DNA of 59,529 nucleotides from NCBI RefSeq assembly GCF_001194135.2, contig NC_068981.1:110185846-110245374 (forward strand), in the 5' to 3' direction. The notes below the pieces were generated by a model. That model was not told where the DNA came from, did no database searches, and worked only from the letters and a program-made list of their open reading frames with translations. The stretch is from Octopus bimaculoides. Lineage: Eukaryota. The position numbers and the translations under genes are program-made. Each line of letters begins with the position of its first letter. Position 1 is the first letter of the stretch. Shown here piece by piece: positions 9,578 to 59,529 of the stretch.

Positions 9578-11615
9578 ATATTAATATCTCCAGCCAATTT
9601 TTAGCAACCAGCAGTGAGTACACAGAATTATCCATCAGAAGAATTCACAGAGTGACTAACAACTAATTGTAGTCACAGATGTTAGATACTGATTGTTGTG
9701 GTTAGCTGTTAACAGGAACTTAAATGAGAGCTAATATGGTATCCGCCTGGATAATATATCCCTTCAAATTCACTTTTATACATCTATATTGACACTCCAA
9801 TAATACTTTTAATTGAACATTCCAGAAAAAGTTTTTGGTCACTCTAGATAAGAAAAGACTCCTAAATTTGAAGCTATCTTAATAAGTGCCATGCACGAAA
9901 CTCTTGATCTTTGAGTCACATTTGTAACTCTCTGCTAATTAGAAACAATATAAAAGTATGTGTATCATGTGTCTGCAATTGTGTTTGTATATTTGATATA
10001 ATACCACTTGTCAAACTGGAATTGTCTCAAAAGAAGCACAACTTAACCATCCAACAATTGGATATCAATAAAAGAGTTCCAAACATAGAATTGAATTTTG
10101 TCTTGGCTGCAATTGAATAACTAAAACAGTAAAAGAATACGAATTTGATTTGTCCTATTGTATGTAAGCTTTATATGTTTAAGATTTAATAAAATTTAAG
10201 TATCTGTAGAATCAGTCTTGTTTAAATACACCAGTAACACACACTGTTTAGGAATTTCTCTAATCTAAATTTTAAGTAGTGTCACTGGTTTCATTCAAAA
10301 CAAGCAATCCCTAACATTCTCTTAATTATTTTCTTTTATTCTTTACATCTAACAAAGTTCTTTTACTTAGCAAGCATCATATTCTGTTTCTACCTCTCCT
10401 GAAATACAAATTTATAGTATTATGTATGATACAAATGATAGTGTTGATAAGAGACTTTTTATAATATCTAGATACTAACTCTCATTCTTAATCTCCTAAA
10501 CAAGATTTAAGATTATAATCTCTTTACAGACCCCCCCCCCCAATCCCTTTATGATTTTCTCCTGCATTGTACTTATTGAAAGCCACATTGCAATTAAGCT
10601 AATTTCTATTGCCTTCCTCATGGTCCATAAAAGACTTAAAGTTAGCAGCACTTCAATTTTATGAAATTCTTTTCAGTGTTCTGGCTGCTTATAGCTATGA
10701 ATAACCACAATTGCTAGACTATGCTAGATGAAGGCTGTAAGGCGCATTTTGGCTATACACACAGTGTCAACATACAAGGTGTCAACTTTTTAATTTGGTG
10801 TCTAATGCCCTATCAACNNNNNNNNNNNNNNNNNNNNNNNNNNNNNNNNNNNNNNNNNNNNNNNNNNNNNNNNNNNNNNNNNNNNNNNNNNNNNNNNNNN
10901 NNNNNNNNNNNNNNNNNNNNNNNNNNNNNNNNNNNNNNNNNNNNNNNNNNNNNNNNNNNNNNNNNNNNNNNNNNNNNNNNNNNNNNNNNNNNNNNNNNNN
11001 NNNNNNNNNNNNNNNNNNNNNNNNNNNNNNNNNNNNNNNNNNNNNNNNNNNNNNNNNNNNNNNNNNNNNNNNNNNNNNNNNNNNNNNNNNNNNNNNNNNN
11101 NNNNNNNNNNNNNNNNNNNNNNNNNNNNNNNNNNNNNNNNNNNNNNNNNNNNNNNNNNNNNNNNNNNNNNNNNNNNNNNNNNNNNNNNNNNNNNNNNNNN
11201 NNNNNNNNNNNNNNNNNNNNNNNNNNNNNNNNNNNNNNNNNNNNNNNNNNNNNNNNNNNNNNNNNNNNNNNNNNNNNNNNNNNNNNNNNNNNNNNNNNNN
11301 NNNNNNNNNNNNNNNNNNNNNNNNNNNNNNNNNNNNNNNNNNNNNNNNNNNNNNNNNNNNNNNNNNNNNNNNNNNNNNNNNNNNNNNNNNNNNNNNNNNN
11401 NNNNNNNNNNNNNNNNNNNNNNNNNNNNNNNNNNNNNNNNNNNNNNNNNNNNNNNNNNNNNNNNNNNNNNNNNNNNNNNNNNNNNNNNNNNNNNNNNNNN
11501 NNNNNNNNNNNNNNNNNNNNNNNNNNNNNNNNNNNNNNNNNNNNNNNNNNNNNNNNNNNNNNNNNNNNNNNNNNNNNNNNNNNNNNNNNNNNNNNNNNNN
11601 NNNNNNNNNNNNNGT

Positions 11616-21995: not shown

Positions 21996-22639
21996 ATTAA
22001 GCCATACCTGCACCTATGAAAAGAAGGTTGCTCTGAAGTAGAAAGCAATGCCCATATGTCTTAGAAAGACCAAGTGATTTTTTCTATCCTTGTCAAAAAG
22101 AGTGCTAACCATTTTTCCTTTCACTCATAAAAATAAATAAGTAAATAATGCAATACTGATGGAAAGGCCAGGGATATACACAACTCATGCAAGAAATGGG
22201 GAGATAGAAATGTCCATATCATGGTGAGGAGCTGATAAACAAAACTTAGAAGATAATTGATAGATCTGTAAGTACATGTCAAAGTTTGAAAGTGTTTATA
22301 ATATAAATGGGAAAAGGAGAATGTCCTGAGAATCCAAAGATGATAAAAGGTTGTAAAATCAGCAGAGAGAGGAAAATTGGGAAAATCAGCTGTAGTGACT
22401 TCAGCTTGAATACATGTTTTGGAAAAGCTGGTTTGATCACATGGTAGAGGAAAATGTCAGAAGGAAAAGAAATCTATTACACTGAAGAGTGAAGCGGAAG
22501 AGAGGTAAGAGGACAGGAAAACAGGGACAAGGAAGAAAATATGGGTACAAGTGTGCATGCATATGTTTGTGTGTTAGCGAGCTAATGTGTCAATGGTAGA
22601 GAAGGTAGAAAAGAGAGGGGTCAGGCACAATGTAAAATA

Positions 22640-22908: not shown

Positions 22909-24871
22909 TTAACGTACACTTTCCATGCTAGCATGGGTTGGACGATTTGACTGAGGACTGGTGAACCAGATGGCTACACCAGGCTCCAATCTGATTGGCA
23001 GAGTTTCTACAACTCGATGCCCTTCCTAACGCCAACCACTACGAGAGTGTAGTGGGTGCTTTTACGTGCCACCGGCACGAAGGCCAATCAGGTGGTATTG
23101 GCAACGGCCACGCTCAAAATGGTGTATTTTATGTGCCACCTGCACAGGAGCCAGTCCAGCGGCACTGGCAATGACTTCGCTTGAATGTCTTTTCATGTGC
23201 CACCGGCACAAGTGCCATTAAGGTGGTGCTAGTACCGATCATGCTCAAATGGTGCTATTTACACGCCACTGGCAATGATCACGCTCAGACGGTGCTCTTA
23301 GCGCTCCACTGGTACAAGTGCCATCACGATTTTGCTTTCACTTGCCCCAACAGGTCTTCACAAGCCGAGTTTAGTGTCCAATGAAGGAGATGTTGGCATG
23401 GGTGCCAGTTGTCGAATTTAGTTCGATTTCAATTTCACTTGCCTCAACAGGTTTTCGCAAGCAGAGTTTAGTGTCCAATGAAGGAAAGGTACACATAAGT
23501 GGGCTGGCTACACCCTTGGCAGAGGCCTTCGATTATGGTCTCACTTGCCGGGACTTCTCATGCACAGCATATTTCCAAAGGTCTCGGTCACAANNNNNNN
23601 NNNTTAGGTTCAACTTTTCTCTCAAGGTACTTACACTCTGTCGAATATGCACATTGACATTACACATCCATCGGAGTATACTGGCTCCATTCCTTGCGAG
23701 CTTATGCATGTCCTCAGCAGTCATGGCCCATGTTTCACTGCCATGTAGCGTAGCTGTTCGTACACATGTGTCATACATTTTGCCTTTTACTCTGAGTGAG
23801 AGGCACTTTGTCACCAGCAGAGGTAAGAGCTCTCTGAACTTTGCCCAGGCTATTCTTGTTCTAGCAGCTACACTTTCAGCACACCCTCCCTCACTACTAA
23901 CTTGGTCATCTAGATAGCGGAAGCTATCAACTACGTCTAGTTTTTCTCCCTGGAATGTGGCAGAAGTTGTTTTCTGCACATTTTCAGTGTTTATAGCTCC
24001 TGAACATCTGCCACATACAAAAACTAACTTCCTAGTTTACCTTCCTTTGATATTGCTGCACCTCTTATGTGTCCATAGCTTACACTGGGTACATCTTATA
24101 GAGTTTCTACCTATGCCTTTTCTACAGATCGAGCAGGGCCATCTACCTGAAGGGGTTTGTGTTTTGCCTACCGTCCTACTTATTAGGACTTTGGTTTTAG
24201 CTAGGTTGACAATAAGGCCCTTCGATTCTAGTCCTTGCTTCCACACCTGAAACTTCTCCCCTAGTTTTGATAGTGACTCAGCAATTAGCGCAAGGTCATC
24301 AGCATAGAGGAGCTCCCAGGGGTATCCCGTCTTGAATTCCTGTGTTATTGCCTGGAGGACTATGATAAATAGGAGGGGGATGAGGACTGAACCTTGGTGG
24401 ACCCCTACCTCTACCCGGAATTCTTTACTGTACTCGTTGCCAACCCTCACCTTACTGACAGCGTCTCTGTACATGGCTCACACAGCTCTCACTAACCATC
24501 CTTCTATCCTTAGTTTTCCTCATTGACCACCAGATAGGGGATCGGGGGCCCTGTCAAAGGCTTTCTACATGTCAACGAAAGCGAGGTACTGAGGTTTATC
24601 TTTGGCTAGGTATTTCTCCTGCAGTTGTCTTACCAGAAATATAGCATCAGTGGTGCTTTTCCCTGGCACGAACCCAAACTGCATCTCATCTAAACTGACT
24701 CTTTTCCTAATTAGTTGGGTTATGATCCTCTCCGTGACTTTCATTACCTGATCTAACAACTTGATACCTCTGTAATTATTTGTATCTAAAGCATCACCTT
24801 TACCTTTGTAGCGGTTGACTATGGTGCTGCTACACCAGTCATTGGGTATGACTCCTTCGTGTATCACCTGG

Positions 24872-26365: not shown

Positions 26366-26857
26366 GTATCAGAATACCACTTCCCAGAGATAGGAGCTAA
26401 CATTCCAAAGCCACATATTTCTTACTATTAAAATACACATTGTGAATGCAACGAATATAACAGAAATAAGCTTACCTTGTATGAACCCTTTGTATCACTA
26501 TACTTAAGGCTCATCAGCTGGACTTACTGTATATCATCTATTTTTGAAAATATTCATCACATTACACTATGTGTGTCCTTTCATAGTGTGTATTTTAATA
26601 GTGAGAAATTTGTGGTTTTGGAGTGTTAGTTCCTATCTCTAGGAAGCGGTATATTGATACTCTACTTAATTTATTTGTATATTTTACGTATATAGGTATA
26701 AACTTGCTGGCCACTTTATTATTTTTAATAATGGTAATAATACCTTACTTAATTTTATATATTACTTGTCCTGTTTTCCATTTTTTTCTCGTTGTTTACT
26801 TATTTCATGTTATTTGCACCATTGGTGATATCCTGTTCCCATATATGCATATATATA

Positions 26858-28020
26858 CAGGCGTTGGACAAAATGGAAACACCTAGCATCATAGCATCAT
26901 AATTTTGAAATATCTATAAAACCGTCAAAAGTCTGTTTATTTGTATGTTTTCTTGATTTATTATTAGTATTGCTTAATATGTTTTGCTAAATTGATGTTT
27001 CTTTTCAGATATCATCAGAAAAAGGTAATTAAAATTCATTAAAATGACAGATCTATCAGTTTTTCAAAGAGGTCAAATTGTTGGTACTCGTATGGCAGGT
27101 GCTAGCGTAATGAAAACAGCCGAAATGTTTGGTGTATCAAGAAGTACTGTCTCAAAAGTAACGACAACCTTTGAGAAAGAGGGGAAAACCTCCTTGTCAA
27201 AACAAAACACTGGAAGAAAACCAAAACTTTTAAGTAGGGACTGTCAGACTCTTATGCAAACTGTTAGAAAGGATCACAAAAGTACAACTCCAAAAATTAC
27301 TGCAGAGCTTAATGACCACCTTGAGAATTCAGTTTCCACAAAATCTGTTCGCTGGGAGCTGCACAAAGCTGGATTTCATGGGAGGGCTGCAATCAGAAAA
27401 CCACTACTTTCAAAAACAAATGCTGCAAAGTGTTTAGAGCGGAGTAAAAACCTACAGAATTGGTCCCTAGAGCAGTGGAAGAATGTTATTTTCTCGGATG
27501 AGTCATCTTTTACCTTATTTCCAAATACTGGCCGAGTATTCGTGTGGAGACAGCCAAAAGAAGCATTTGACCCAGACTGCCTTCTTCCAACTATTAAACA
27601 TGGCAGAATTAATAGTCAAGACTATTTAAGCATTTTATCTGATCAAATTTATCCTATGGTTGCAGAACAGTTTCCGGAGGGAAATGCAATCTTTCAGGAT
27701 GACAATGCACCAATTCACACAGCTAAAGTTGGTATGAGGAACATTCTAGTGAAGTTGAACATCTTATCTGGCGAAAACAATCTCCAGATTTCAATATTAT
27801 TAAACATTTATGGTCCATTTTAGAAAAACAACTAAGGAGTCAATATCCTCCACCATGTTTTAGCTGAAGAATAGACAAAAATTCCTCTTGAAACAATTCA
27901 AACTTTGTACAAGTCCATACCTCATAGAATTCAAGCTGCAATTACTGCCAAAGGCAATCCTATCCTATATTAAGATAAATTTGTTTGAAATTTTACGGTG
28001 TTTCCATTATTTTGTCCAAC

Positions 28021-28025
<5 letters not shown>
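26858..28025 (+). mobile_element. Near full-length defective Tc1 (DD34E-type) transposon
   Basis: TIRs CAGGCGTTGGACAAAA-TGGAAACACC and GGTGTTTCCATTATTTTGTCCAACCCCT, with TA flanks. ORF 27044-27823 has paired HTH, FSDESSF and FQDDNAPIH. After a frameshift it reads SPDFNIIKHLW (catalytic E>K). The VMVWG segment is deleted. Confidence 0.95.
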
Positions 28026-28059
<34 letters not shown>

Positions 28060-31861: not shown

Positions 31862-32300
31862 ATATATTTATATGTCTGTTTATCTTTTCTGCATCTATAC
31901 TTATTTATATGGAAATTGATAGGCATGTATATGTACAAGTATATCTAACTTTTATATATATGTGTATATATGAATGTGTTATTATCTGTGTGAAAATAGA
32001 AATATCTTTATTCATGTATATTTATCTTTATTCATGCATATATATTTATGCAATAATTATAATTAGAGAATCAATGACTTGTAGGGACATGGCATTTTCA
32101 TTATGTAACCATAATATACTACAAAGTTTGTAAGTCAATACTGTGTACTACTGTGTTGGCAGTGTTCTTATATCTCATGTTAAGATCATCTCTACAGATT
32201 TTCAATAGAAATTATAGCCAGCACTGATTTTGTTATAATGTTACATATCCAAGACACCAGATGTAAACAAACAATGAGATTGAGAATTAAAGCATGGGTA

Positions 32301-32352
32301 ATGGGTATATATGCCATATTTCAGGAGTTTTTGCTCCTTCATCAGTGCCCAT
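32301..32352 (-). ncRNA. Minimal type I hammerhead ribozyme
   Basis: atgggca CTGATGA aggag-caaaaa-ctcct GAAA tat-ggc-ata TA^tacccat. AUA triplet; one stem I mismatch. Confidence 0.8.
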
Positions 32353-32649
32353 CTAACCTGTTAGTCACCCACAAACATATTGCTTTAATAGTTACTGATA
32401 TACCAATTTACATATCAAATACATTCCTGGAAGCCAGTACATAACTATTAATGACTTGTAGGGACATGGCATTTTAAATGATTTTATAAGTCAATACCAT
32501 GTGATTCTATGTTAGCAGTGCTCCTAAATCACATATTAAGGGCATTTATACAGATTTTCCATAGAAATTATAGCTAGCACTGATTTTGTTACTTTTTGTA
32601 TCCATGACACCAGACGTAAACAATGAGACTGAGGATGAAACAATGGGTA

Positions 32650-32701
32650 ATGGGTGGATATGCCATATTTCAGGAGTTTTTGCTCCTTCATCAGCACTCA
32701 T
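32650..32701 (-). ncRNA. Minimal type I hammerhead ribozyme
   Basis: atgagtg CTGATGA aggag-caaaaa-ctcct GAAA tat-ggc-ata TC^cacccat. AUC triplet; one stem I mismatch. Confidence 0.8.
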
Positions 32702-32999
32702 CTAACCCATTAATCATCCACTACATTGCCACTACATATAGTGGTGTAACATTATTGGATACAATATAGAGATTGGTACATTCTCAAAATTTATTTCCTT
32801 TTATTTTATGGTATGTCATACAACATACTCTTATGGTTACAATGACCTACATGTATTTCTGCTGCACAGAGTACCATAAAATAAAAGAAAATAAATTTTG
32901 AGAATGTACCATATTTCCTATCATTATAATTATTGTTAATATACACTCCAGATAATATTTCAATCCAGTTAAACAAACACAGAATACATATTTGTAGGT

Positions 33000-33685
33000 G
33001 TGTGCAGGTGGGTGCCCATGATGGTTTAATGCTTATCTCCCTTTTATTCATCATAGTCATCCAGGCAATACTGAAAGAGTTTAGACTGGGTGGATATGGG
33101 AACTACTATATGCTGATGATCTCATTCTCATAACTGAATCTTTAGTAGGATTAGGGAAGAAATTCCTGGCGTGGAAGCAAAATCTGAAATCTAAGGGCCT
33201 CAAAGTAAACTTAGCAAAAGCTGAAGTATTAATCAGTATGAAAACTGACTAGACTCTACCACATAGAAATGGCTTTGTTTGATATGTAGAAGTGTGATGG
33301 AATCATGGCCAGGTTAACAGAGAAAGCTGGATTTCTATATAGCAGATGTTCAAGAACAGTAAATAGTAAGGGTGCACAGGACATAGATACTCCCAAATGC
33401 CCAGAAGAATCCCTAGAGGTAATAAGATAGCTTGTTATCTTGGTGACCTAATTAGCAGTGGTGGCAAATGTTCTGAAAGTGTATTACTTAGAGTAAGAAC
33501 AGGCAGATTGTATGGCTTGTGTACAAACTGCAATACTTCATGCTAGTGAGACATGGGCAATGAATACAGAGGAATTGTGATGACTAGATATGCAATATCT
33601 GTGCATGAATGACTGAGCGCAAAACTGGGCATAAGAGTAATTAGATATAGTGTGCAAGAAAGAAGACTACATTAGTTTGGGTACC
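33000..33685 (+). mobile_element. Strongly decayed RTE LINE fragment
   Basis: gaactactatatgctgatgatctc (LLYADDL), caaagtaaacttagcaaaag, gttatcttggtgacctaattagcagtggtgg. Confidence 0.8.
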
Positions 33686-42738: not shown

Positions 42739-43525
42739 NNNNNNNNNNNNNNNNNNNNNNNNNNNNNNNNNNNNNNNNNNNNNNNNNNNNNNNNNNNNNN
42801 NNNNNNNNNNNNNNNNNNNNNNNNNNNNNNNNNNNNNNNNNNNNNNNNNNNNNNNNNNNNNNNNNNNNNNNNNNNNNNNNNNNNNNNNNNNNNNNNNNNN
42901 NNNNNNNNNNNNNNNNNNNNNNNNNNNNNNNNNNNNNNNNNNNNNNNNNNNNNNNNNNNNNNNNNNNNNNNNNNNNNNNNNNNNNNNNNNNNNNNNNNNN
43001 NNNNNNNNNNNNNNNNNNNNNNNNNNNNNNNNNNNNNNNNNNNNNNNNNNNNNNNNNNNNNNNNNNNNNNNNNNNNNNNNNNNNNNNNNNNNNNNNNNNN
43101 NNNNNNNNNNNNNNNNNNNNNNNNNNNNNNNNNNNNNNNNNNNNNNNNNNNNNNNNNNNNNNNNNNNNNNNNNNNNNNNNNNNNNNNNNNNNNNNNNNNN
43201 NNNNNNNNNNNNNNNNNNNNNNNNNNNNNNNNNNNNNNNNNNNNNNNNNNNNNNNNNNNNNNNNNNNNNNNNNNNNNNNNNNNNNNNNNNNNNNNNNNNN
43301 NNNNNNNNNNNNNNNNNNNNNNNNNNNNNNNNNNNNNNNNNNNNNNNNNNNNNNNNNNNNNNNNNNNNNNNNNNNNNNNNNNNNNNNNNNNNNNNNNNNN
43401 NNNNNNNNNNNNNNNNNNNNNNNNNNNNNNNNNNNNNNNNNNNNNNNNNNNNNNNNNNNNNNNNNNNNNNNNNNNNNNNNNNNNNNNNNNNNNNNNNNNN
43501 NNNNNNNNNNNNNNNNNNNNNNNNN

Positions 43526-47275: not shown

Positions 47276-48426
47276 TGTAGTAAATATATATATTTGTGTA
47301 TGCACACACACACACACCTCAAAATACAGCTTGATTTAATTGCTTACTTTGGTAAAATGCATAACATTTCAGAAATTCAATCTTTTAGCATCAAATCTAT
47401 TGGAAATTTATCAGGTTATTGTATATACACATAAAGTCAATTTTAGTTAATTGCATTCAATTCTGAGTAAAATGTAGCATTTGATTTGATATGAATAAAT
47501 TGATTCTGGAGGTTTCTGTTTTTGTGGTGAGTTAAAATGAAAGCAGTCAGCACTTTGTGTTAGCAAACAACAGATGTCAAACAAGTCAAATATATTCAAA
47601 TTATTTTTAGCATTTCAGTGAATTAAAGACTAACAAAATTAAGTCTATTTTAATCTTATTTTTTATTCTTCAATATATATCTATAGCAGGAAAATAATTT
47701 TGAATTAACTCTCTAATTTCTGAAGTGCATTCCCAATCCTGTTAGAAACTACAGATTTTGATGAAATGTAGTTACTTCTGTATTAAAACCATAAAAATCC
47801 AACTTTTGCATGAATTTGGATGATATTTAGTGATAGGATATAAATTGGTGTACATTGAAAATGTCATTTTACTTGTTCTTGCTAATCTTTACCTGTTGTC
47901 ATATCACTTTCACCTTCTCAAGTAGATTAAATATAAATAAGTTGATTACATATCAGTGTTTTCACACATATTTAGAAAATACAATCAATTTCTTGTCTCA
48001 GCTGAATTTATACCTCAATAGTTTCTGTGAGCAGCAAACTACACAGCCCTCATTAGAAAAAGTATTCCAAGATATGCCTTCATGTACTTCATTCAAAAGT
48101 TTTGTAACAAATCAATGTTATTTTTATTACAATAATTACAATTTCCTCATAAACCCATCAGTATGCAGAGACATTACATTTAAACATTAAAGGTTTGTAG
48201 GTACATGGCACTTTGTTATACAAACACAATATACTATGAAGTATACTAAATGTTTTTATAAGTCAGTACCATGTCCTGCTGTGTCAGCAGTGCTTGTTAC
48301 ATTATTTTTAAGGTTGTTTCTACAGATATTCTATAGAAACTATATCCAGCACTGACTTTTGCTACAACATTTCATATCGAGATGTCAGATGTAAACAAAC
48401 AATGAGACCAGAGACAAAAATGGGTA

Positions 48427-48478
48427 ATGAGTGTATATGCCATATTTCGGGGGTTATTGCTACTTCATCAGCACCCAT
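48427..48478 (-). ncRNA. Hammerhead ribozyme copy with disrupted stem II (probably inactive)
   Basis: atgggtg CTGATGA agtag-caataa-ccccc GAAA tat-ggc-ata TA^cactcat. Confidence 0.6.
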
Positions 48479-48749
48479 CTAACCCACTTCTATCCAAACA
48501 AATTGCTTATATAGCCACCACATACAGCAGTGTTAAGTTATTGGATGTGGTACTGACTTATAAAAACATTTTGTATATTTCATAGTATATTGTGTTTGCA
48601 TAACGAAGTGCAACATACCTACAAGCCTTTAATGTTTACATACCAGTTCCAGGAATGTGTCTAATATGTTAATTGGTATATCCAATAACTTAACACCACT
48701 GTATGCAGTGGCTATATAAGCAATGTGTTCGGAGACAGAAGGGGGTTAG

Positions 48750-48801
48750 ATGGGTGCTGATGAAGGGGCAACAACCCCTGAAATATTGCATATACATTCA
48801 T
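48750..48801 (+). ncRNA. Intact minimal type I hammerhead ribozyme
   Basis: atgggtg CTGATGA agggg-caacaa-cccct GAAA tat-tgc-ata TA^cattcat. All three stems pair; predicted cut after 48794. Confidence 0.85.
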
Positions 48802-49715
48802 TACTCATTTTTGTCTCCAATCTCATTGCTTGTTTACACCTGATGTCTCAATACAAAATGTTGTAGCAAAAATCAGTGCTGGCTATAGTTTGTATAGAAT
48901 ATCTGTTGAAACAGCCTTAAACATACTACATTTAAAATATATCAGTAAATTAATGGTTCCTTTTAATTTTTGCCATTCATTAGCAAAAGCATTAATGCAA
49001 CATCAAATGATGTGGTCATTCCACTCCATTCTACTTCCTAATATAAACTCTACACTAGTGTATACAGATAGAATATCACTTGATTATTTTCTCAAATCTA
49101 AGCTCTGTTTCTGAAGTTAAATCATAAATAAATAGTTTCTCTATATTTTAAATCACTGTTTGTGGTATTACTTGCCATGGTGCTTAAAACAGTGAAGGAA
49201 AACAAATCTGAAGAAATTTACTGATAAATTGCAAAAAAAATGACATTGTGTATACAGGAAATTCTCTCTAAGAGGAAGTTAAACATTGTTTTTCACACAG
49301 AAGAGTGCTTAGTTCTGTTTTTTTATCTCTACTGCCAAACTATTTGAATTTCAGTTGAAAATTTGACAAGAACTGCATTTACTTGAGATACAGAACTTTA
49401 ATATTTAAGCAGTGAGTGGAAGTTGTTTTTTTCCCCCCTACTATGTCTTGGGATTGATCTAATTAAGTGTTCCTTAATCAGTATAACTCTAGTTGTTATT
49501 CAGTTAGTCAAAATGTGTGGAGGTCATTGTTGAAAAGTGTGAAATCTGGTTGAAGAATATTAAAGAAAAATCCTATAAGCAATTGCCATTATCATTTAAA
49601 AAGTAGCTTGAACAGAGTGGAAGGTAATTAAATTGTGTTCACATTTGTTGTTTTGTAGAATACTGAACTTAATATTAAATGAGCTATGAATTTTTGAAAA
49701 TGTTTAAATGTAATC

Positions 49716-54181: not shown

Positions 54182-54410
54182 ACTTGGGGATGGTCATATT
54201 GCCAGTTTAGCCAATAAAAACACACGCACTGTATATTTGGTGTTAATTTGCTTCAGCTTTATATTACATTAATCTTAATCTTATTTCGGCCAGAGTTCTT
54301 TCGTCACACTTCTGTGACCTCATCAGTGGTCCTTTGTTTCCTTCCTTCTTATGTGTGTCTCACCTTGCTAAATATCAGCCATTTTGTATTTTGTATTCCT
54401 ATTGTATGTG
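54176..54410 (-). mobile_element. Solo PLE terminal repeat (pLTR)
   Basis: Homologous to 14405-14600 (tacttggggatgg-cata...cttcagcttt...tctgtgacctc). Confidence 0.65.
54288..54332 (-). ncRNA. Minimal type I hammerhead with an extra G after the CUGAUGA core
   Basis: ggacca CTGATGA g gtcac-agaagt-gtgac GAAA G-aa-C TC^tggcc. Confidence 0.65.
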
Positions 54411-54874: not shown

Positions 54875-57355
54875 GATGAGTAAAGGTGATGCTTTAGATA
54901 GAAATAACTGAAGGGGTATCAAACTGTTATATTCCTGGTATGGCAACTGCAGGAGAAATACCTAGCCAAAGATAAACCCCTATACTTGGCTTTTGTGGAC
55001 TTGAAGAAAGCCTTTAACAGGGTCCCCCAATCCCTTATCTGGTGGGTGATGCGGAAACTGGGGATTGACGAATAGTTAATAAGGGCTGTACAGGCCCTTT
55101 ACAGAGATATCATTAGCAAGTTTAGGGTTGGCAATGAGTATAGTGAAGAATTCCGGGTAGAAGTAGGGGTCCACCAAGGATCACCCCTCAACCCCCTCTT
55201 ATTCATCAAAGTCCATCAGGCAATAACAGATGAATTCAAGACAGGTTGCCCCTGGGAGCTCCTCTATGCTGATGACCTGGCCCTCATAGCAGAATCACTA
55301 CCAGAACTAGAGAAGAAATTTCAGGTTTGGAAGCAAGGTTTACAATCGAAGGGCCTAAGAGTCAATGTTGCAAAGACCAAAGTTCTAGTAAGTAGGAAGG
55401 CGAACACATCACACAACCCTTCAGGTAGATGGCCCTGCTCGATCTGAAGAAAAGGAGTAGGTAGAGACTCCATAAGATGTACCTAGTGTAAGCTATGGAC
55501 ACATAAGAGGTGCAGTAACATCCAAAAAAAGATTAACCAGGAAGATAGATTTCGTGTACGGCAGATGCATTGGGGCAATAAACACCACAGATGCTCAGAA
55601 AACAGATTCCATCACATGCCAGGTGGAGAAACTAGAAGTAGTGGATCTATTTTAAAACGGGAGCCACACTTTTCATTAATGTTTTACGTAGTGTTTTTGG
55701 TACCGAAAGACTTTCAAACTTCGTATACTTATCTATTTTGTGTTATAGAACAGAAAAATATTTTTGTATTCGAATTTATTTCATGTAAAAAATTGTCTTA
55801 TTTCGATAATTTCAACCAATCACTGACAAGTATTCAGTTGTTTACATTTACTCCTTTGGCTGATTAAGCGGTGTAAAGCGTATTTAATCTCCATAACTTC
55901 TGACATTTGCAGAGAGGCAACAACCCTAACCCTAACCCTAGCCATTTTTTGACATGGAAATAATAATTTTNNNNNNNNNNNNNNNNNNNNNNNNNNNNNN
56001 NNNNNNNNNNNNNNNNNNNNNNNNNNNNNNNNNNNNNNNNNNNNNNNNNNNNNNNNNNNNNNNNNNNNNNNNNNNNNNNNNNNNNNNNNNNNNNNNNNNN
56101 NNNNNNNNNNNNNNNNNNNNNNNNNNNNNNNNNNNNNNNNNNNNNNNNNNNNNNNNNNNNNNNNNNNNNNNNNNNNNNNNNNNNNNNNNNNNNNNNNNNN
56201 NNNNNNNNNNNNNNNNNNNNNNNNNNNNNNNAAAAAGATGTTTTATATGACACATTCTACCAGTGTTCCAAGTTTCAAAGTGTTTCGTTAAGAAAATACT
56301 GTGGCCCCCGTTTTAAAATAGATCCAAAGTAGTTGATAGCTTCCGCTACCTAGGTGACCAAGTCTGTAGTGGGGGTGGATGCTCAGAAAGTGTTACCACT
56401 AGAATAAGAATAACCTGGGTAAAGTTCAGAAAGCTTCTACCCATACTGGTGACAAAGGGCCTCTCGCTCAGAGTGAAAAGTAGATTGTATGATGCATGTG
56501 TGTGAACTGTCATGCTTCACAGCAGTGAAGCATGGGCCATGACTGCTGAAGACATGTGTAAGCTCGAAGGAAATGAAGCTAGCATGATCTGCTGGATGTG
56601 TAATGTCAGTGTGCACACGACAGAGTGTAAGCGCCCTGAAAGAAATGTTGGACATAAGAAGCATCAGATGTGGCGTGCAAGAGACATTTGCATTGATTTG
56701 GTCATTACTACGGATGGATGAGGAGATCTGTGTGAAGAAGTGCGACTCCCAAACAGTTGAAGGAATCTGGGGTAGAGGTAGACCCAGGAAGACATGGGAT
56801 GTCGTGTTAAAGCATGACCTTTGAACATTGGACCTCACAGAGGCAATGACGAAAGACCGAGACCTCTGGAGGTATGCTGTGACTGGGAAGACCCAGCAAA
56901 TAAAGTGAGTTCACAGCTGTAACCTACACCAATATCACATAACCAGCTCACTCAAAAGTACCATGGATCGTAGGGTGACATGCTGTGCCTGAGACCTATT
57001 GAGTCAAGTATATCAACATCGAAATCAAAATCAAATGGAAATTGTAGTTGTGATCTCTGTGCCGGTGGCACGTAAAAAGCATCATCTGAACGTGGCCAAT
57101 GCTTCCGTACTGGTGGCACATAAACAGCATCAACCGATTGTGGTTGTTGCCAGTCTCCTCTGGCCACTGTGCCGGTGGCATGTAAAAAGCACCCACTACA
57201 CTTTTGGAGTGGTTGGCATTAGGAAGGGCATCCAGCTGTAGAAACATGGCCAGAGCAGACTGGAGCCTGGTGCAGCCTCCTGGCTTCCCAGACCCCAGTC
57301 AAACCGTCCAACCCATGCCAGCATGGAAAACGGACGTTAAATGATGATGATGATG
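54875..57355 (+). mobile_element. 5'-truncated RTE LINE interrupted by a MITE
   Basis: QEKYLAKDKP, VGVHQGS, WELLYADD, FRYLGD, GRGRPRKTW; 3' UTR and (gat)n tail. Confidence 0.93.
55643..56325. mobile_element. MITE with 26 bp TIRs (Merlin-like?)
   Basis: GGATCTATTTTAAAACGGGAGCCACA / TGTGGCCCCCGTTTTAAAATAGATCC (1 mismatch). TSD gaagtagt/aaagtagt. Internal (CCCTAA)3. Confidence 0.88.
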
Positions 57356-57558: not shown

Positions 57559-58280
57559 NNNNNNNNNNNNNNNNNNNNNNNNNNNNNNNNNNNNNNNNNN
57601 NNNNNNNNNNNNNNNNNNNNNNNNNNNNNNNNNNNNNNNNNNNNNNNNNNNNNNNNNNNNNNNNNNNNNNNNNNNNNNNNNNNNNNNNNNNNNNNNNNNN
57701 NNNNNNNNNNNNNNNNNNNNNNNNNNNNNNNNNNNNNNNNNNNNNNNNNNNNNNNNNNNNNNNNNNNNNNNNNNNNNNNNNNNNNNNNNNNNNNNNNNNN
57801 NNNNNNNNNNNNNNNNNNNNNNNNNNNNNNNNNNNNNNNNNNNNNNNNNNNNNNNNNNNNNNNNNNNNNNNNNNNNNNNNNNNNNNNNNNNNNNNNNNNN
57901 NNNNNNNNNNNNNNNNNNNNNNNNNNNNNNNNNNNNNNNNNNNNNNNNNNNNNNNNNNNNNNNNNNNNNNNNNNNNNNNNNNNNNNNNNNNNNNNNNNNN
58001 NNNNNNNNNNNNNNNNNNNNNNNNNNNNNNNNNNNNNNNNNNNNNNNNNNNNNNNNNNNNNNNNNNNNNNNNNNNNNNNNNNNNNNNNNNNNNNNNNNNN
58101 NNNNNNNNNNNNNNNNNNNNNNNNNNNNNNNNNNNNNNNNNNNNNNNNNNNNNNNNNNNNNNNNNNNNNNNNNNNNNNNNNNNNNNNNNNNNNNNNNNNN
58201 NNNNNNNNNNNNNNNNNNNNNNNNNNNNNNNNNNNNNNNNNNNNNNNNNNNNNNNNNNNNNNNNNNNNNNNNNNNNNNNN

Positions 58281-58770: not shown

Positions 58771-59529
58771 AAGATGTGGTAGAAATGATGGAAATGTTGA
58801 CCTTCTATGTAGAAACTACCTACTTCAGTATGGACACTGATATATATCGACAAGAGGAGGGTTTAGTTATGGGTTCGCCATTATCACCGGTAATAGCCAA
58901 TATATACATGGAATACTTTGAGAATTTGGCTTTAGAATCAACACCACTAAAACCAACACTATGGCTACGATATGTTGATAACACCTTTATACTCTGGCCC
59001 CATCAGGAAGATGTCCAAGTACTGTTAGATCATGTGAACTCAATAAAGCCATCCGTACACTTCACAATGGAAAAGGAAAAAAAGACAATCAGCTGGCATT
59101 CCTGGATGTATTAATAGCATGCACCAAGTATGGATTCAGGACATCCGTATACCGCAAGCTGACGATACCTGGACGATACCTCAACTTCAATTCCCACCAT
59201 CCATACAGTGTAAAGAGACGGATTGCTCAGTGCCTAAAACATCGTGCAAAGAATATAAGTAGCGATCATGATATACACCACAAAGAAATGATCTGTTAAG
59301 CAACAACTACACCAAAAGTATACTATCCACTCCAATTATGAAGAAGAGAGAGGACGAGGCCCATAAACTGTCCACAGTCTGTCTACCTTATGTGAAAGGC
59401 CTCTCCGAAAAGATATATAAGATTTGCAGCCCATATGACAACAGAACAGTAAAACCACCAATAGAGGAGAATATGACCAAAAACTGCGTGTACTGCATTT
59501 CATGCAGCTGTAGTAGGTTATACATTTAT
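58771..59529 (+). mobile_element. Penelope-like element RT to GIY-YIG (frameshifted; runs off the window)
   Basis: TTYF...YRQEEGLVMGSPLSPVIANIYME...WLRYVDNTF...FTME; AFLDV; RYLNFNSHHP; CLPYVKGLSEKI; NCVYCISCSC. Confidence 0.93.

What the first reader, a model, noticed from the sequence alone, without database searches (positions are those of the whole stretch)
32073..32765. Retrozyme-like tandem unit: two type I hammerheads 349 nt apart could excise a monomer that circularises
Seen: a non-coding ~350-380 bp unit in tandem. Each copy carries, on the minus strand, CUGAUGA, a 5-bp stem II, GAAA, a 3-bp stem III, an NUH triplet (AUC or AUA) and stem I. Predicted cuts are at 32657/32656 and 32308/32307. 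Four family copies occur in the window, and stem II covaries (aggag/ctcct versus agggg/cccct), consistent with conserved RNA structure. Established: metazoan non-LTR retrozymes (amphibians, corals, mussels) are tandem repeats of a few hundred bp with minimal type I hammerheads; they yield circular RNAs and are linked to Penelope-like elements. Inference: this is a cephalopod retrozyme family, possibly mobilised by the PLE RTs common in this genome. I cannot say whether it has already been catalogued.
Basis: partly seen in the sequence, partly recalled or inferred. Interest (0 to 1): 0.88.

Follow-up and report, generated by a model that had tools for sequence, protein, structure and literature searches.

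The report
Octopus hammerhead-ribozyme tandem repeat (retrozyme relic)
A short non-coding repeat in an octopus-like genome carries an intact-looking self-cleaving hammerhead ribozyme in each copy and looks like an old, decayed member of the "retrozyme" class of small circular-RNA retroelements, which is already known from mussels, corals and amphibians. That makes it a real but fairly ordinary find.

Summary
On the minus strand at 32070-32760 lies a 1.9-unit head-to-tail repeat (unit 349 nt). It holds two complete type I hammerhead motifs, with predicted cuts at 32657|32656 and 32308|32307. A second locus (48185-48926) holds two more copies head-to-head. One has an intact hammerhead and the other has a broken stem II. 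An exact 10-bp direct repeat flanks this pair (TACATTTAAA, empirical p about 0.003).

A strict hammerhead descriptor finds exactly the three intact motifs and none in 200 shuffles. Helix III alone is unstable, but two copies co-fold into a double hammerhead (-40.5 against -36.2 kcal/mol). Rfam's hammerhead models do not score any copy. Covariation (two compensatory pairs) has no statistical power with four sequences.

The window shares many repeats with Octopus sinensis and contains one degenerate Penelope-like RT fragment, which is not adjacent to either locus. I read this as relic insertions of a non-LTR retrozyme-type element, probably integrated by Penelope-like machinery. Cleavage, circular RNA and expression are untested. 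The copies are 10-20% diverged, so these loci are probably dead. It is a new member of a known kind and of moderate interest.

The parts
32070..32760 (-). Array 1: a 1.9-unit head-to-tail tandem of the hammerhead repeat. It consists of a 5' partial unit (32760-32657), a full 349-nt unit (32656-32308) and a 3' partial unit (32307-32070). The 5' edge may extend to 32783.
   Evidence: BLAST of the unit against the window, nhmmer, MAFFT alignment, and flank alignments.
32643..32710 (-). Hammerhead A (type I). Stem I is 8 bp, then a 2-nt bulge, then 6 bp. Then follow CUGAUGA, stem II AGGAG/CUCCU, GAAA, and helix III A-U plus UAU/AUA with loop GGC. H17 is C at 32657, so the predicted cut is 32657|32656.
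32294..32361 (-). Hammerhead B (type I), with the same core. Pair 1.1-2.1 is A-U here instead of G-C. H17 is A at 32308, so the predicted cut is 32308|32307.
32308..32656 (-). The 349-nt monomer that cleavage at both hammerheads would release. It is 34% G+C and has no coding capacity.
   Evidence: One search found no protein homologue for any open frame across the motif.
48185..48546 (-). Copy M: 0.9 unit in the inverted orientation. Its hammerhead (48420-48487) is defective, with stem II AGUAG/CCCCC.
   Evidence: It fails the descriptor.
48547..48926 (+). Copy P: 0.92 unit, joined head-to-head to M. Its hammerhead (48741-48808) is intact, with stem II AGGGG/CCCCU. H17 is A at 48794.
48175..48184 (+). 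Left copy of the candidate target-site duplication TACATTTAAA flanking the M+P pair.
   Evidence: exact 10-bp direct repeat. A repeat of 10 bp or more occurs in 0.33% of 20000 random 41-nt window pairs.
48927..48936 (+). Right copy of the candidate target-site duplication TACATTTAAA.
58785..59451 (+). Degenerate Penelope-like RT fragment (GSPLSP...RYVDN motifs, with stops and frameshifts). It is a candidate relative of the mobilising enzyme and is not adjacent to either hammerhead locus.

Best explanation
These are two old insertions of a short non-coding retroelement of the non-LTR retrozyme kind, in an Octopus-like genome.

Inferred mechanism:
- A tandem source locus is transcribed into a multimeric RNA.
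- Each unit carries a type I hammerhead whose helix III is too weak to fold alone. Two neighbouring hammerheads pair through their near-palindromic AUAUGGCAUAU segments into a double hammerhead and cut after H17.
[quoted passage not shown] The long stem I holds these ends together, and a host RNA ligase could join them into a circle.
- Multimeric or circular RNA is then copied into AT-rich DNA by the RT/endonuclease of an autonomous Penelope-like element. This gives more-than-unit tandem copies (array 1) or, when both DNA strands prime, head-to-head inverted copies flanked by a 10-bp duplication (locus 2).

What is shown: the motif, the tandem and inverted architecture, the flanking repeat, the predicted preference for the dimeric fold, and the presence of a PLE RT fragment.

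What is inferred: cleavage, circularisation, transcription and the identity of the mobilising enzyme.

The copies seen here are probably inactive relics.
For: - **Motif:** The complete hammerhead core and three helices are present in 3 of 4 copies. A strict descriptor gives 3 hits against 0 in 200 shuffles, and the sequence pattern gives 4 hits against 0.01 expected.
- **Pairing across copies:** All 13 core positions are invariant, and 91% of the pair cells are standard base pairs. When the 3' partners are slid by 1-3 columns, only 30-51% pair.
- **Compensatory changes:** There are two, at pairs 1.1-2.1 and 10.4-11.4.
- **Conservation:** The hammerhead segment has no indels and 86% identity. 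The unit body has 80% identity plus 100 gap positions (p = 0.017).
- **Dimeric fold:** The helix III hairpin has a free energy of 0 kcal/mol, while the duplex of two copies gives -10.1. The co-fold minimum-energy structure of A+B is a double hammerhead at -40.5, against -36.2 for the two monomers.
- **Retrozyme features:** The unit is 349-408 nt, 34% G+C, has no tRNA head, no protein homologue for its open frames, and no Pfam-bearing ORF nearby other than unrelated LINE fragments. These match the description in PMC7229834 (150-450 bp, under 50% GC, TSDs longer than 4 bp; mussel units 350-390 bp).
- **Retroposition:** Locus 2 is flanked by an exact 10-bp direct repeat (p about 0.003). Its target contains ATT.
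- **PLE-type integration:** The head-to-head arrangement matches the inverted 5'-truncated copies typical of PLE insertions (PMC8557442). It also matches the finding that a PLE protein cleaves and extends both DNA strands at AT-rich sites and starts reverse transcription at internal AC-rich sites (PMC11167929). Array 1 and copy M end within 5 nt of each other in an AC-rich segment.
- **Host genome:** The window shares 61 repeat matches with a 20.8-kb Octopus sinensis locus, and a PLE RT fragment lies at 58.8-59.4 kb.
Against: - No Rfam hammerhead family scores any copy, even at E<=10 on stretches of 131-451 nt.
- Pair 10.1-11.1 is A-U, not the highly conserved G-C.
- The hammerhead fold is 4-7 kcal/mol above the monomer minimum free energy.
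- The circular monomer is not more stable than shuffles (z = -0.95), whereas most described retrozyme circles are reported as highly self-paired.
- Covariation is not significant with four sequences.
- Only 1.9 units are in tandem, Tandem Repeats Finder did not call them, and array 1 has no convincing TSD (6 bp, p = 0.34).
- No further copies could be retrieved. There were none in 20.8 kb of O. sinensis, none in metagenome or viral collections, and none via translated ORFs.
- No expression data were available.
- No intact PLE was available to compare its terminal repeats with the unit.
Confidence: 0.72

Rival explanations
1. The units are not an independent non-autonomous family. They would be leftover pseudo-LTR pieces (solo or partial-tandem terminal repeats) of a coding Penelope-like element whose ORF has been deleted or lies elsewhere. 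The hammerhead would then be simply the PLE's own pLTR ribozyme.
For: PLE pLTRs carry type I hammerheads and occur in partial tandems with inverted 5'-truncated copies (PMC4209133, PMC8557442). In Xenopus, retrozyme families are sister to PLE pLTRs (bioRxiv 10.64898/2026.07.22.740005). The window contains a PLE RT fragment.
Against: tblastn with 120 PLE fragments finds PLE coding sequence only at 58.5-59.4 kb, which is 10 kb from locus 2 and 26 kb from array 1. The units follow each other directly at 349 nt with no room for an ORF. Homology stops at the unit edges. The unit hammerhead lacks the PLE min-HHR signature (no unpaired base after A9, helix II only 5 bp). A separate motif at 54288-54332 does have that signature.
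Confidence: 0.13
2. This is an ordinary dispersed or satellite-like repeat, spread by segmental or tandem DNA duplication, in which the hammerhead-like sequence is a fossil or a coincidence that never cleaved RNA.
For: Rfam is silent. A10.1-U11.1 departs from the consensus. Only about two units are in tandem. The copies are old. Minimal metazoan hammerheads often cleave poorly in vitro (PMC4209133).
Against: A full hammerhead descriptor match is not expected by chance (0 of 200 shuffles). The core is invariant and free of indels across copies that are otherwise 20% diverged with many indels. Stems keep pairing through G-C, G-U and A-U changes. The 10-bp flanking repeat and the permuted, less-than-unit copies point to insertion via an RNA or cDNA intermediate rather than DNA duplication.
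Confidence: 0.1
3. It is a C/D-box small nucleolar RNA-like gene, or a hairpin small-RNA precursor, embedded in a repeat.
For: There are weak Rfam matches to archaeal C/D sRNAs over the CUGAUGA...CUGA stretch (19.9 bits against a gathering score of 42). There are also sub-threshold miRNA-precursor matches over the M/P inverted repeat (85 bits against 230).
Against: All scores are far below the gathering thresholds. The supposed C and D boxes are only 12 nt apart. The miRNA-like match is only the generic long hairpin formed by two inverted copies.
Confidence: 0.02

Closest known systems
Metazoan non-LTR retrozymes (Cervera & de la Pena 2020, PMC7229834), especially the Mytilus galloprovincialis family (350-390 bp units)
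   Same: Both are non-coding, AT-rich tandem units of a few hundred bp with a type I hammerhead in each unit. Both lack LTR, PBS and PPT, have a TSD longer than 4 bp, and co-occur with Penelope-like elements. The host phylum (Mollusca) and the unit size are also the same.
   Different: Only 1.9 units are in tandem here, and the copies are old and partly decayed. Helix I is long (14 bp, interrupted) and pair 10.1-11.1 is A-U. The predicted circle is not unusually self-paired. No expression or circularity data exist. I could not compare the sequence with the mussel units.
Newt satellite 2 and axolotl retrozyme hammerheads (dimeric type I hammerheads)
   Same: Helix III is short with a small near-palindromic loop and is unstable as a monomer. 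The active form is predicted to be a double hammerhead formed by two tandem copies (principle in PMC4209133 and PMC7229834).
   Different: The host is an invertebrate. PMC7229834 reports that most invertebrate retrozyme hammerheads cleave efficiently as monomers, so a dimer-dependent design in a mollusc would be the less common case. This is untested here.
Penelope-like element pLTR minimal hammerheads (Cervera & de la Pena 2014, PMC4209133)
   Same: Both are type I hammerheads with a weak helix III, associated with tandem or inverted insertions in AT-rich DNA.
   Different: The unit hammerhead lacks the unpaired nucleotide between A9 and 10.1, lacks the 6-8 bp helix II and lacks G10.1-C11.1. 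No PLE ORF lies between or next to the copies. A separate motif at 54288-54332(-) does fit the min-HHR description.
Schistosoma Sm-alpha SINE-like hammerhead repeats
   Same: Both are short non-coding dispersed and tandem repeats carrying a type I hammerhead with an internal loop in stem I.
   Different: No tRNA-like head or poly(A) tail was found here. This comparison rests on my own knowledge and was not tested.

Membership tests
Hammerhead ribozyme, type I | Conserved catalytic core: C3-U4-G5-A6-N7-G8-A9, G12-A13-A14, A15.1-U16.1, and H17 at the cleavage site | tested here: met
   The core is present and invariant in all four copies. H17 is C in copy A and A in copies B, M and P.
Hammerhead ribozyme, type I | Three helices around the core, with helix I open and helices II and III closed by loops | tested here: met
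   The descriptor match covers A, B and P. Helix I is 8+6 bp, helix II is 5 bp, and helix III is 4 bp including 15.1-16.1. In copy M helix II is broken.
Hammerhead ribozyme, type I | G10.1-C11.1 closing pair of helix II (highly conserved) | tested here: not met
   The pair is A-U in A, B and P and A/C in M.
Hammerhead ribozyme, type I | Match to the curated covariance model (Rfam hammerhead families) | tested here: not met
   No hammerhead family was reported at gathering score or at E<=10 on short stretches. The PLE-type motif at 54.3 kb is also missed, so the models seem insensitive to such minimal variants.
Hammerhead ribozyme, type I | Site-specific self-cleavage | not testable with these tools
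   This needs in vitro transcription of monomer and dimer constructs.
Hammerhead ribozyme, type I | Covariation supporting the helices | tested here: inconclusive
   Two pairs change on both sides. 173 of 500 shuffles reach the observed score, and four sequences give no power.
Non-LTR retrozyme (metazoan) | Tandem repeats of 150-450 bp, each with a type I hammerhead | tested here: met
   The period is 349 nt, with two hammerheads in 1.9 units. The array is short.
Non-LTR retrozyme (metazoan) | Non-coding, low GC (under 50%), no LTR | tested here: met
   G+C is 34%. ORFs are at most 86 aa and have no homologue among 5.8 billion proteins. Homology ends at the unit edges.
Non-LTR retrozyme (metazoan) | Dispersed copies with target-site duplications longer than 4 bp | tested here: met
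   An exact 10-bp repeat flanks locus 2 (p about 0.003). The result for array 1 is not convincing (6 bp, p = 0.34).
Non-LTR retrozyme (metazoan) | Expressed as linear and circular monomer RNAs | not testable with these tools
   No transcriptome data could be reached. The translated-ORF search that might have hit transcriptome assemblies found nothing.
Non-LTR retrozyme (metazoan) | Circular RNA predicted to be stable and highly self-paired | tested here: not met
   The circular minimum free energy is -74.5 kcal/mol, against -69.2 +/- 5.6 for dinucleotide shuffles (z = -0.95). 62% of bases are paired.
Non-LTR retrozyme (metazoan) | Co-occurrence with Penelope-like elements in the genome | tested here: met
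   A PLE-type RT fragment lies at 58785-59451.
PLE pseudo-LTR | The repeat flanks an ORF encoding RT plus a GIY-YIG endonuclease | tested here: not met
   There is no PLE coding sequence within 10 kb of either locus. The neighbouring ORFs are LINE fragments.
PLE pseudo-LTR | Sequence homology between the unit and the terminal repeats of a resident PLE | not testable with these tools
   No intact octopus PLE could be fetched. The only PLE copy in the window is truncated by an assembly gap and by the window end.
tRNA-derived SINE | tRNA-like 5' head | tested here: not met
   ARAGORN finds no tRNA-like structure in the window.

The most novel reading that the evidence does not exclude
The three insertion copies may preserve a direct footprint of how retrozymes are integrated.
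- Two independent insertions (array 1 and copy M) end within 5 nt of each other in an AC-rich segment about 250 nt downstream of the cleavage site.
- The same two insertions possibly begin at the same base.
- All three copies are an integer number of units minus about 30-47 nt.
- One insertion is a head-to-head pair with a 10-bp duplication at an AT-rich, ATT-containing site.

If these patterns hold genome-wide, they would be genomic evidence that a Penelope-like enzyme copies non-LTR retrozymes by internal initiation at a fixed RNA site and by priming on both DNA strands, as shown in vitro for one PLE. They could also show whether the template is a multimer with a fixed transcription start or a circle.
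Probability: 0.25. Interest if true: 0.6.

Novelty: new member of a known kind. Interest (0 to 1): 0.36.

Why it matters
If confirmed genome-wide and in RNA, this would extend hammerhead retrozymes to cephalopods, whose genomes are rich in repeats and whose RNA biology attracts much attention. It would also add a mollusc example whose ribozyme seems built to work only as a dimer. The most useful aspect is practical. The defined ends, the inverted twin copy and the clean 10-bp duplication give testable predictions linking retrozyme integration to Penelope-like reverse transcriptases, a link that has so far rested on co-occurrence and sequence relatedness. In itself the locus is a decayed copy of a known element class and has no evident host function.

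Tried and rejected
- **Rfam scans.** I ran cmscan at gathering score on the whole window and at E<=10 on four short stretches. There was no hammerhead hit. Only weak C/D-box and miRNA-like matches appeared, and I reject them as side effects of the CUGAUGA/CUGA boxes and of the inverted repeat.
- **Tandem Repeats Finder.** It did not call the 349-nt period.
- **More copies from public collections.** An exact-pattern scan of metagenome contigs gave two chance hits without a stem II. The scan of viral contigs gave none.
- **More copies through translated frames.** I aligned the open frames that cross the hammerhead in all copies and searched 5.8 billion proteins, hoping to hit gene calls on octopus or transcriptome contigs. 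Nothing scored at E<=10.
- **Intact PLEs with terminal repeats.** The homologues of the window's PLE fragment are all short fragments on contigs of ENA assembly ERZ21867824. Those contigs share no other repeats with the window and hold no hammerhead unit.
- **Locating the window's own assembly.** An exact look-up of a window ORF is not on record.
- **Octopus sinensis.** The one locus I could fetch (20.8 kb) has no copy of the unit.
- **TSD for array 1.** Only a 6-bp repeat was found, which is not significant.
- **Palindrome at 32780-32911.** It is unique in the window and unrelated to the unit.
- **Stability of the circular monomer.** It is not distinguishable from shuffles.

Full report
**Observation**

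Read on the minus strand, window 32760-32070 is a head-to-tail repeat. BLAST of the segment between the two predicted cleavage sites (32656 to 32308, 349 nt) against the window shows three pieces in register. Unit positions 285-348 lie at 32721-32658, the full unit follows, and positions 2-210 lie at 32306-32070. nhmmer places the outer limits at about 32764 and 32067.

Each of the two unit junctions carries the same motif. It reads CUGAUGA, stem II AGGAG/CUCCU with loop CAAAAA, GAAA, UAU-GGC-AUA, then UC or UA, followed by a strand complementary to the sequence just upstream of CUGAUGA.

The same motif occurs at 48434-48471(-) and 48757-48794(+). That is four matches against 0.01 expected from shuffles. 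The coordinates, the 349-nt spacing, the triplets AUC and AUA and the count of four copies are therefore all confirmed.

**Is it a hammerhead?**

I wrote a strict type I descriptor. It required helix I of 6 bp with at most one mismatch, CUGANGA, a perfect helix II of 4-8 bp, GAAA, a helix III hairpin, UH, and the 3' strand of helix I. It finds exactly three places in the window (A, B and P) and none in 200 composition-preserving shuffles. Copy M fails because three substitutions have destroyed helix II (AGUAG/CCCCC).

In an alignment of the four 73-nt motifs, all core positions are invariant. 91% of the pair cells of the proposed structure are standard pairs, against 30-51% when the 3' partners are slid by 1-3 columns.

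Helix I is long: 8 bp, a 2-nt bulge, then 6 bp. It is maintained through G-C, G-U and A-U changes.

Two pairs change on both sides: 1.1-2.1 (G-C in A, M and P; A-U in B) and 10.4-11.4 (A-U in A and B; G-C in P). With four sequences this has no statistical weight, since 173 of 500 shuffles do as well.

There are three departures from the textbook motif:
- Pair 10.1-11.1 is A-U rather than G-C.
- No Rfam hammerhead model reports any copy, even at E<=10 on stretches of 131-451 nt.
- The hammerhead fold lies 4-7 kcal/mol above the monomer minimum free energy.

The Rfam models also miss a second, PLE-type minimal hammerhead in the window. I therefore read the Rfam silence as low sensitivity to minimal animal variants rather than as disproof. 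It stays on the record as a failed test.

**Monomer or dimer?**

The helix III segment does not fold as a hairpin (0 kcal/mol). Two copies pair through AUAUGGCAUAU into a 10-bp duplex with one G-G mismatch (-10.1 kcal/mol). Co-folding the two 73-nt motifs of array 1 gives a double hammerhead as the minimum-energy structure, with an extended helix III, both helices II and both helices I. Its energy is -40.5 kcal/mol, against -36.2 for the two separate folds.

This is the design described for newt and axolotl repeats and for PLE hammerheads (PMC4209133, PMC7229834). It predicts cleavage in multimeric transcripts and stability of the monomer.

**The element**

The unit is 349 nt in array 1 and about 408 nt in the second locus. 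The array unit has two deletions of about 25 nt. It is 34% G+C.

It has no tRNA-like head. Its open frames are at most 86 aa, and an alignment of the frames that stay open across the motif finds no relative among 5.8 billion proteins.

Homology ends at the unit edges. The neighbours are an RTE-like LINE fragment, a microsatellite, a unique 130-nt palindrome and another LINE fragment.

The hammerhead segment is better preserved than the body: 86% against 80% identity, with no gaps against 100 gap positions (p = 0.017). This is what one expects if much of the divergence arose in lineages that had to keep the ribozyme.

The predicted circular monomer is not more stable than shuffled sequences (z = -0.95). 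This does not match the highly self-paired circles described for most retrozymes.

**Second locus**

Copy M (48546 down to about 48185, minus strand) and copy P (48547 to about 48926, plus strand) are joined head-to-head. Each spans a hammerhead and is about 0.9 unit long. They are each other's closest relatives (86-88% identity), as expected for one insertion event.

The pair is flanked by an exact 10-bp direct repeat, TACATTTAAA, at 48175-48184 and 48927-48936. Repeats of 10 bp or more occur in 0.33% of random pairs of 41-nt windows at similar spacing. I take this as a target-site duplication.

The architecture matches the inverted 5'-truncated copies typical of Penelope-like insertions (PMC8557442). 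It also matches the in vitro finding that a PLE protein cuts and extends both DNA strands at AT-rich ATT sites and starts reverse transcription at internal AC-rich RNA sites (PMC11167929). Array 1 has no convincing duplication (6 bp, p = 0.34).

**Ends**

I number a 408-nt unit from the cleavage site.
- Array 1 runs 296 (or about 272) to 408, then 1 to 408, then 1 to about 246.
- Copy M runs 296 to 408, then 1 to about 249.
- Copy P runs 161 to 408, then 1 to 132.

Array 1 and M thus end within 5 nt of each other, in an AC-rich stretch (CCATGTMCCTACAAR), and may start at the same base (ATCCAATAA). All three copies are a whole number of units minus 30-47 nt.

Two models fit this pattern. In one, transcripts of a tandem source have a fixed start and reverse transcription initiates internally. 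In the other, a circle is copied with the last stretch occluded. With three copies and boundaries good to about 10 nt this is a lead and not a result.

**Host and helper**

A 20.8-kb Octopus sinensis locus (GCA_006345805.1) shares 61 repeat matches at 70-92% identity with the window. Three loci (about 60 kb in all) from ENA assembly ERZ21867824, which is unrelated in repeat content, share only the coding parts of two transposons. The window is therefore from an Octopus-like genome.

One degenerate PLE-type RT fragment (GSPLSP...RYVDN) lies at 58785-59451(+). tblastn with 120 homologous fragments finds no other PLE coding sequence in the window. The units are therefore not terminal repeats of a coding PLE here. 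I could not fetch an intact octopus PLE to test whether its terminal repeats are related to the unit.

**Comparison and novelty**

The features match the definition of metazoan non-LTR retrozymes (PMC7229834): tandem units of 150-450 bp, a type I hammerhead in each, under 50% GC, no LTR, larger TSDs, and co-occurrence with PLEs. Mussel units are 350-390 bp. A 2026 preprint argues that such elements are non-autonomous PLE derivatives (bioRxiv 10.64898/2026.07.22.740005).

Full-text searches found no report of hammerhead repeats in cephalopods. However, the class is described as widespread from molluscs to arthropods. I cannot check Repbase or Dfam.

**Verdict**

This is a new member of a known kind. 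The copies in this window are 10-20% diverged and one ribozyme is dead, so these loci are most likely relics. Cleavage, circularisation and expression remain untested.

Noticed in passing
window 54288-54332 (-): A second, different hammerhead-like motif of the PLE 'minimal' type: GGACCA / CUGAUGA / unpaired G / GUCACA-GAAG-UGUGAC / GAAA / GAAC / UC^UGGCC. My relaxed descriptor finds it once in the window and never in 300 shuffles. It is solitary, has no PLE ORF beside it, and is not scored by Rfam.
   Followed up: partly
window 22019-22131 (-): A U6atac minor-spliceosomal snRNA match at 54.9 bits (gathering score 33), with two 7-nt deletions relative to the model. It could be a gene or a pseudogene copy.
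   Followed up: no
window 58785-59451 (+): A degenerate Penelope-like RT fragment with stops and frameshifts. An assembly gap (57559-58280) precedes it and it runs towards the window end. Its closest relatives are short fragments (about 76% aa identity) on contigs of ENA assembly ERZ21867824.
   Followed up: partly
window 32780-32911: A 130-nt near-perfect palindrome (predicted hairpin -42.5 kcal/mol) lies directly 5' of array 1. It is unique in the window and absent from the fetched loci. Its last bases overlap the uncertain 5' edge of the array.
   Followed up: partly
window 48456-48772: The head-to-head M/P copies form a long inverted repeat that draws sub-threshold Rfam matches to plant miRNA precursors (85 bits against a gathering score of 230). 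This is generic hairpin resemblance, though such a hairpin could yield small RNAs if transcribed.
   Followed up: no
window 32643-32710 vs 32294-32361: The two hammerheads of the same array differ by a compensatory change at pair 1.1-2.1 (G-C against A-U). This is unexpected if the units were identical at insertion and then drifted neutrally.
   Followed up: no
window 26837-28050 (+): A Tc1/mariner transposase remnant (HTH_Tnp_Tc3_2), 82-85% identical at the DNA level to a copy in Octopus sinensis chromosome CM016861.1.
   Followed up: partly
window 10818-11613, 42739-43525, 57559-58280 and five shorter runs: Eight runs of N (assembly gaps). Long 'ORFs' listed across them are artefacts.
   Followed up: yes
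window 24174-24477 (-), 33006-33243 (+), 55076-55444 (+): Fragments of one LINE family whose RT is followed by a PHD/C1-like zinc finger. One fragment lies 250 nt from array 1 but on the other strand, and it is unrelated to the unit.
   Followed up: partly
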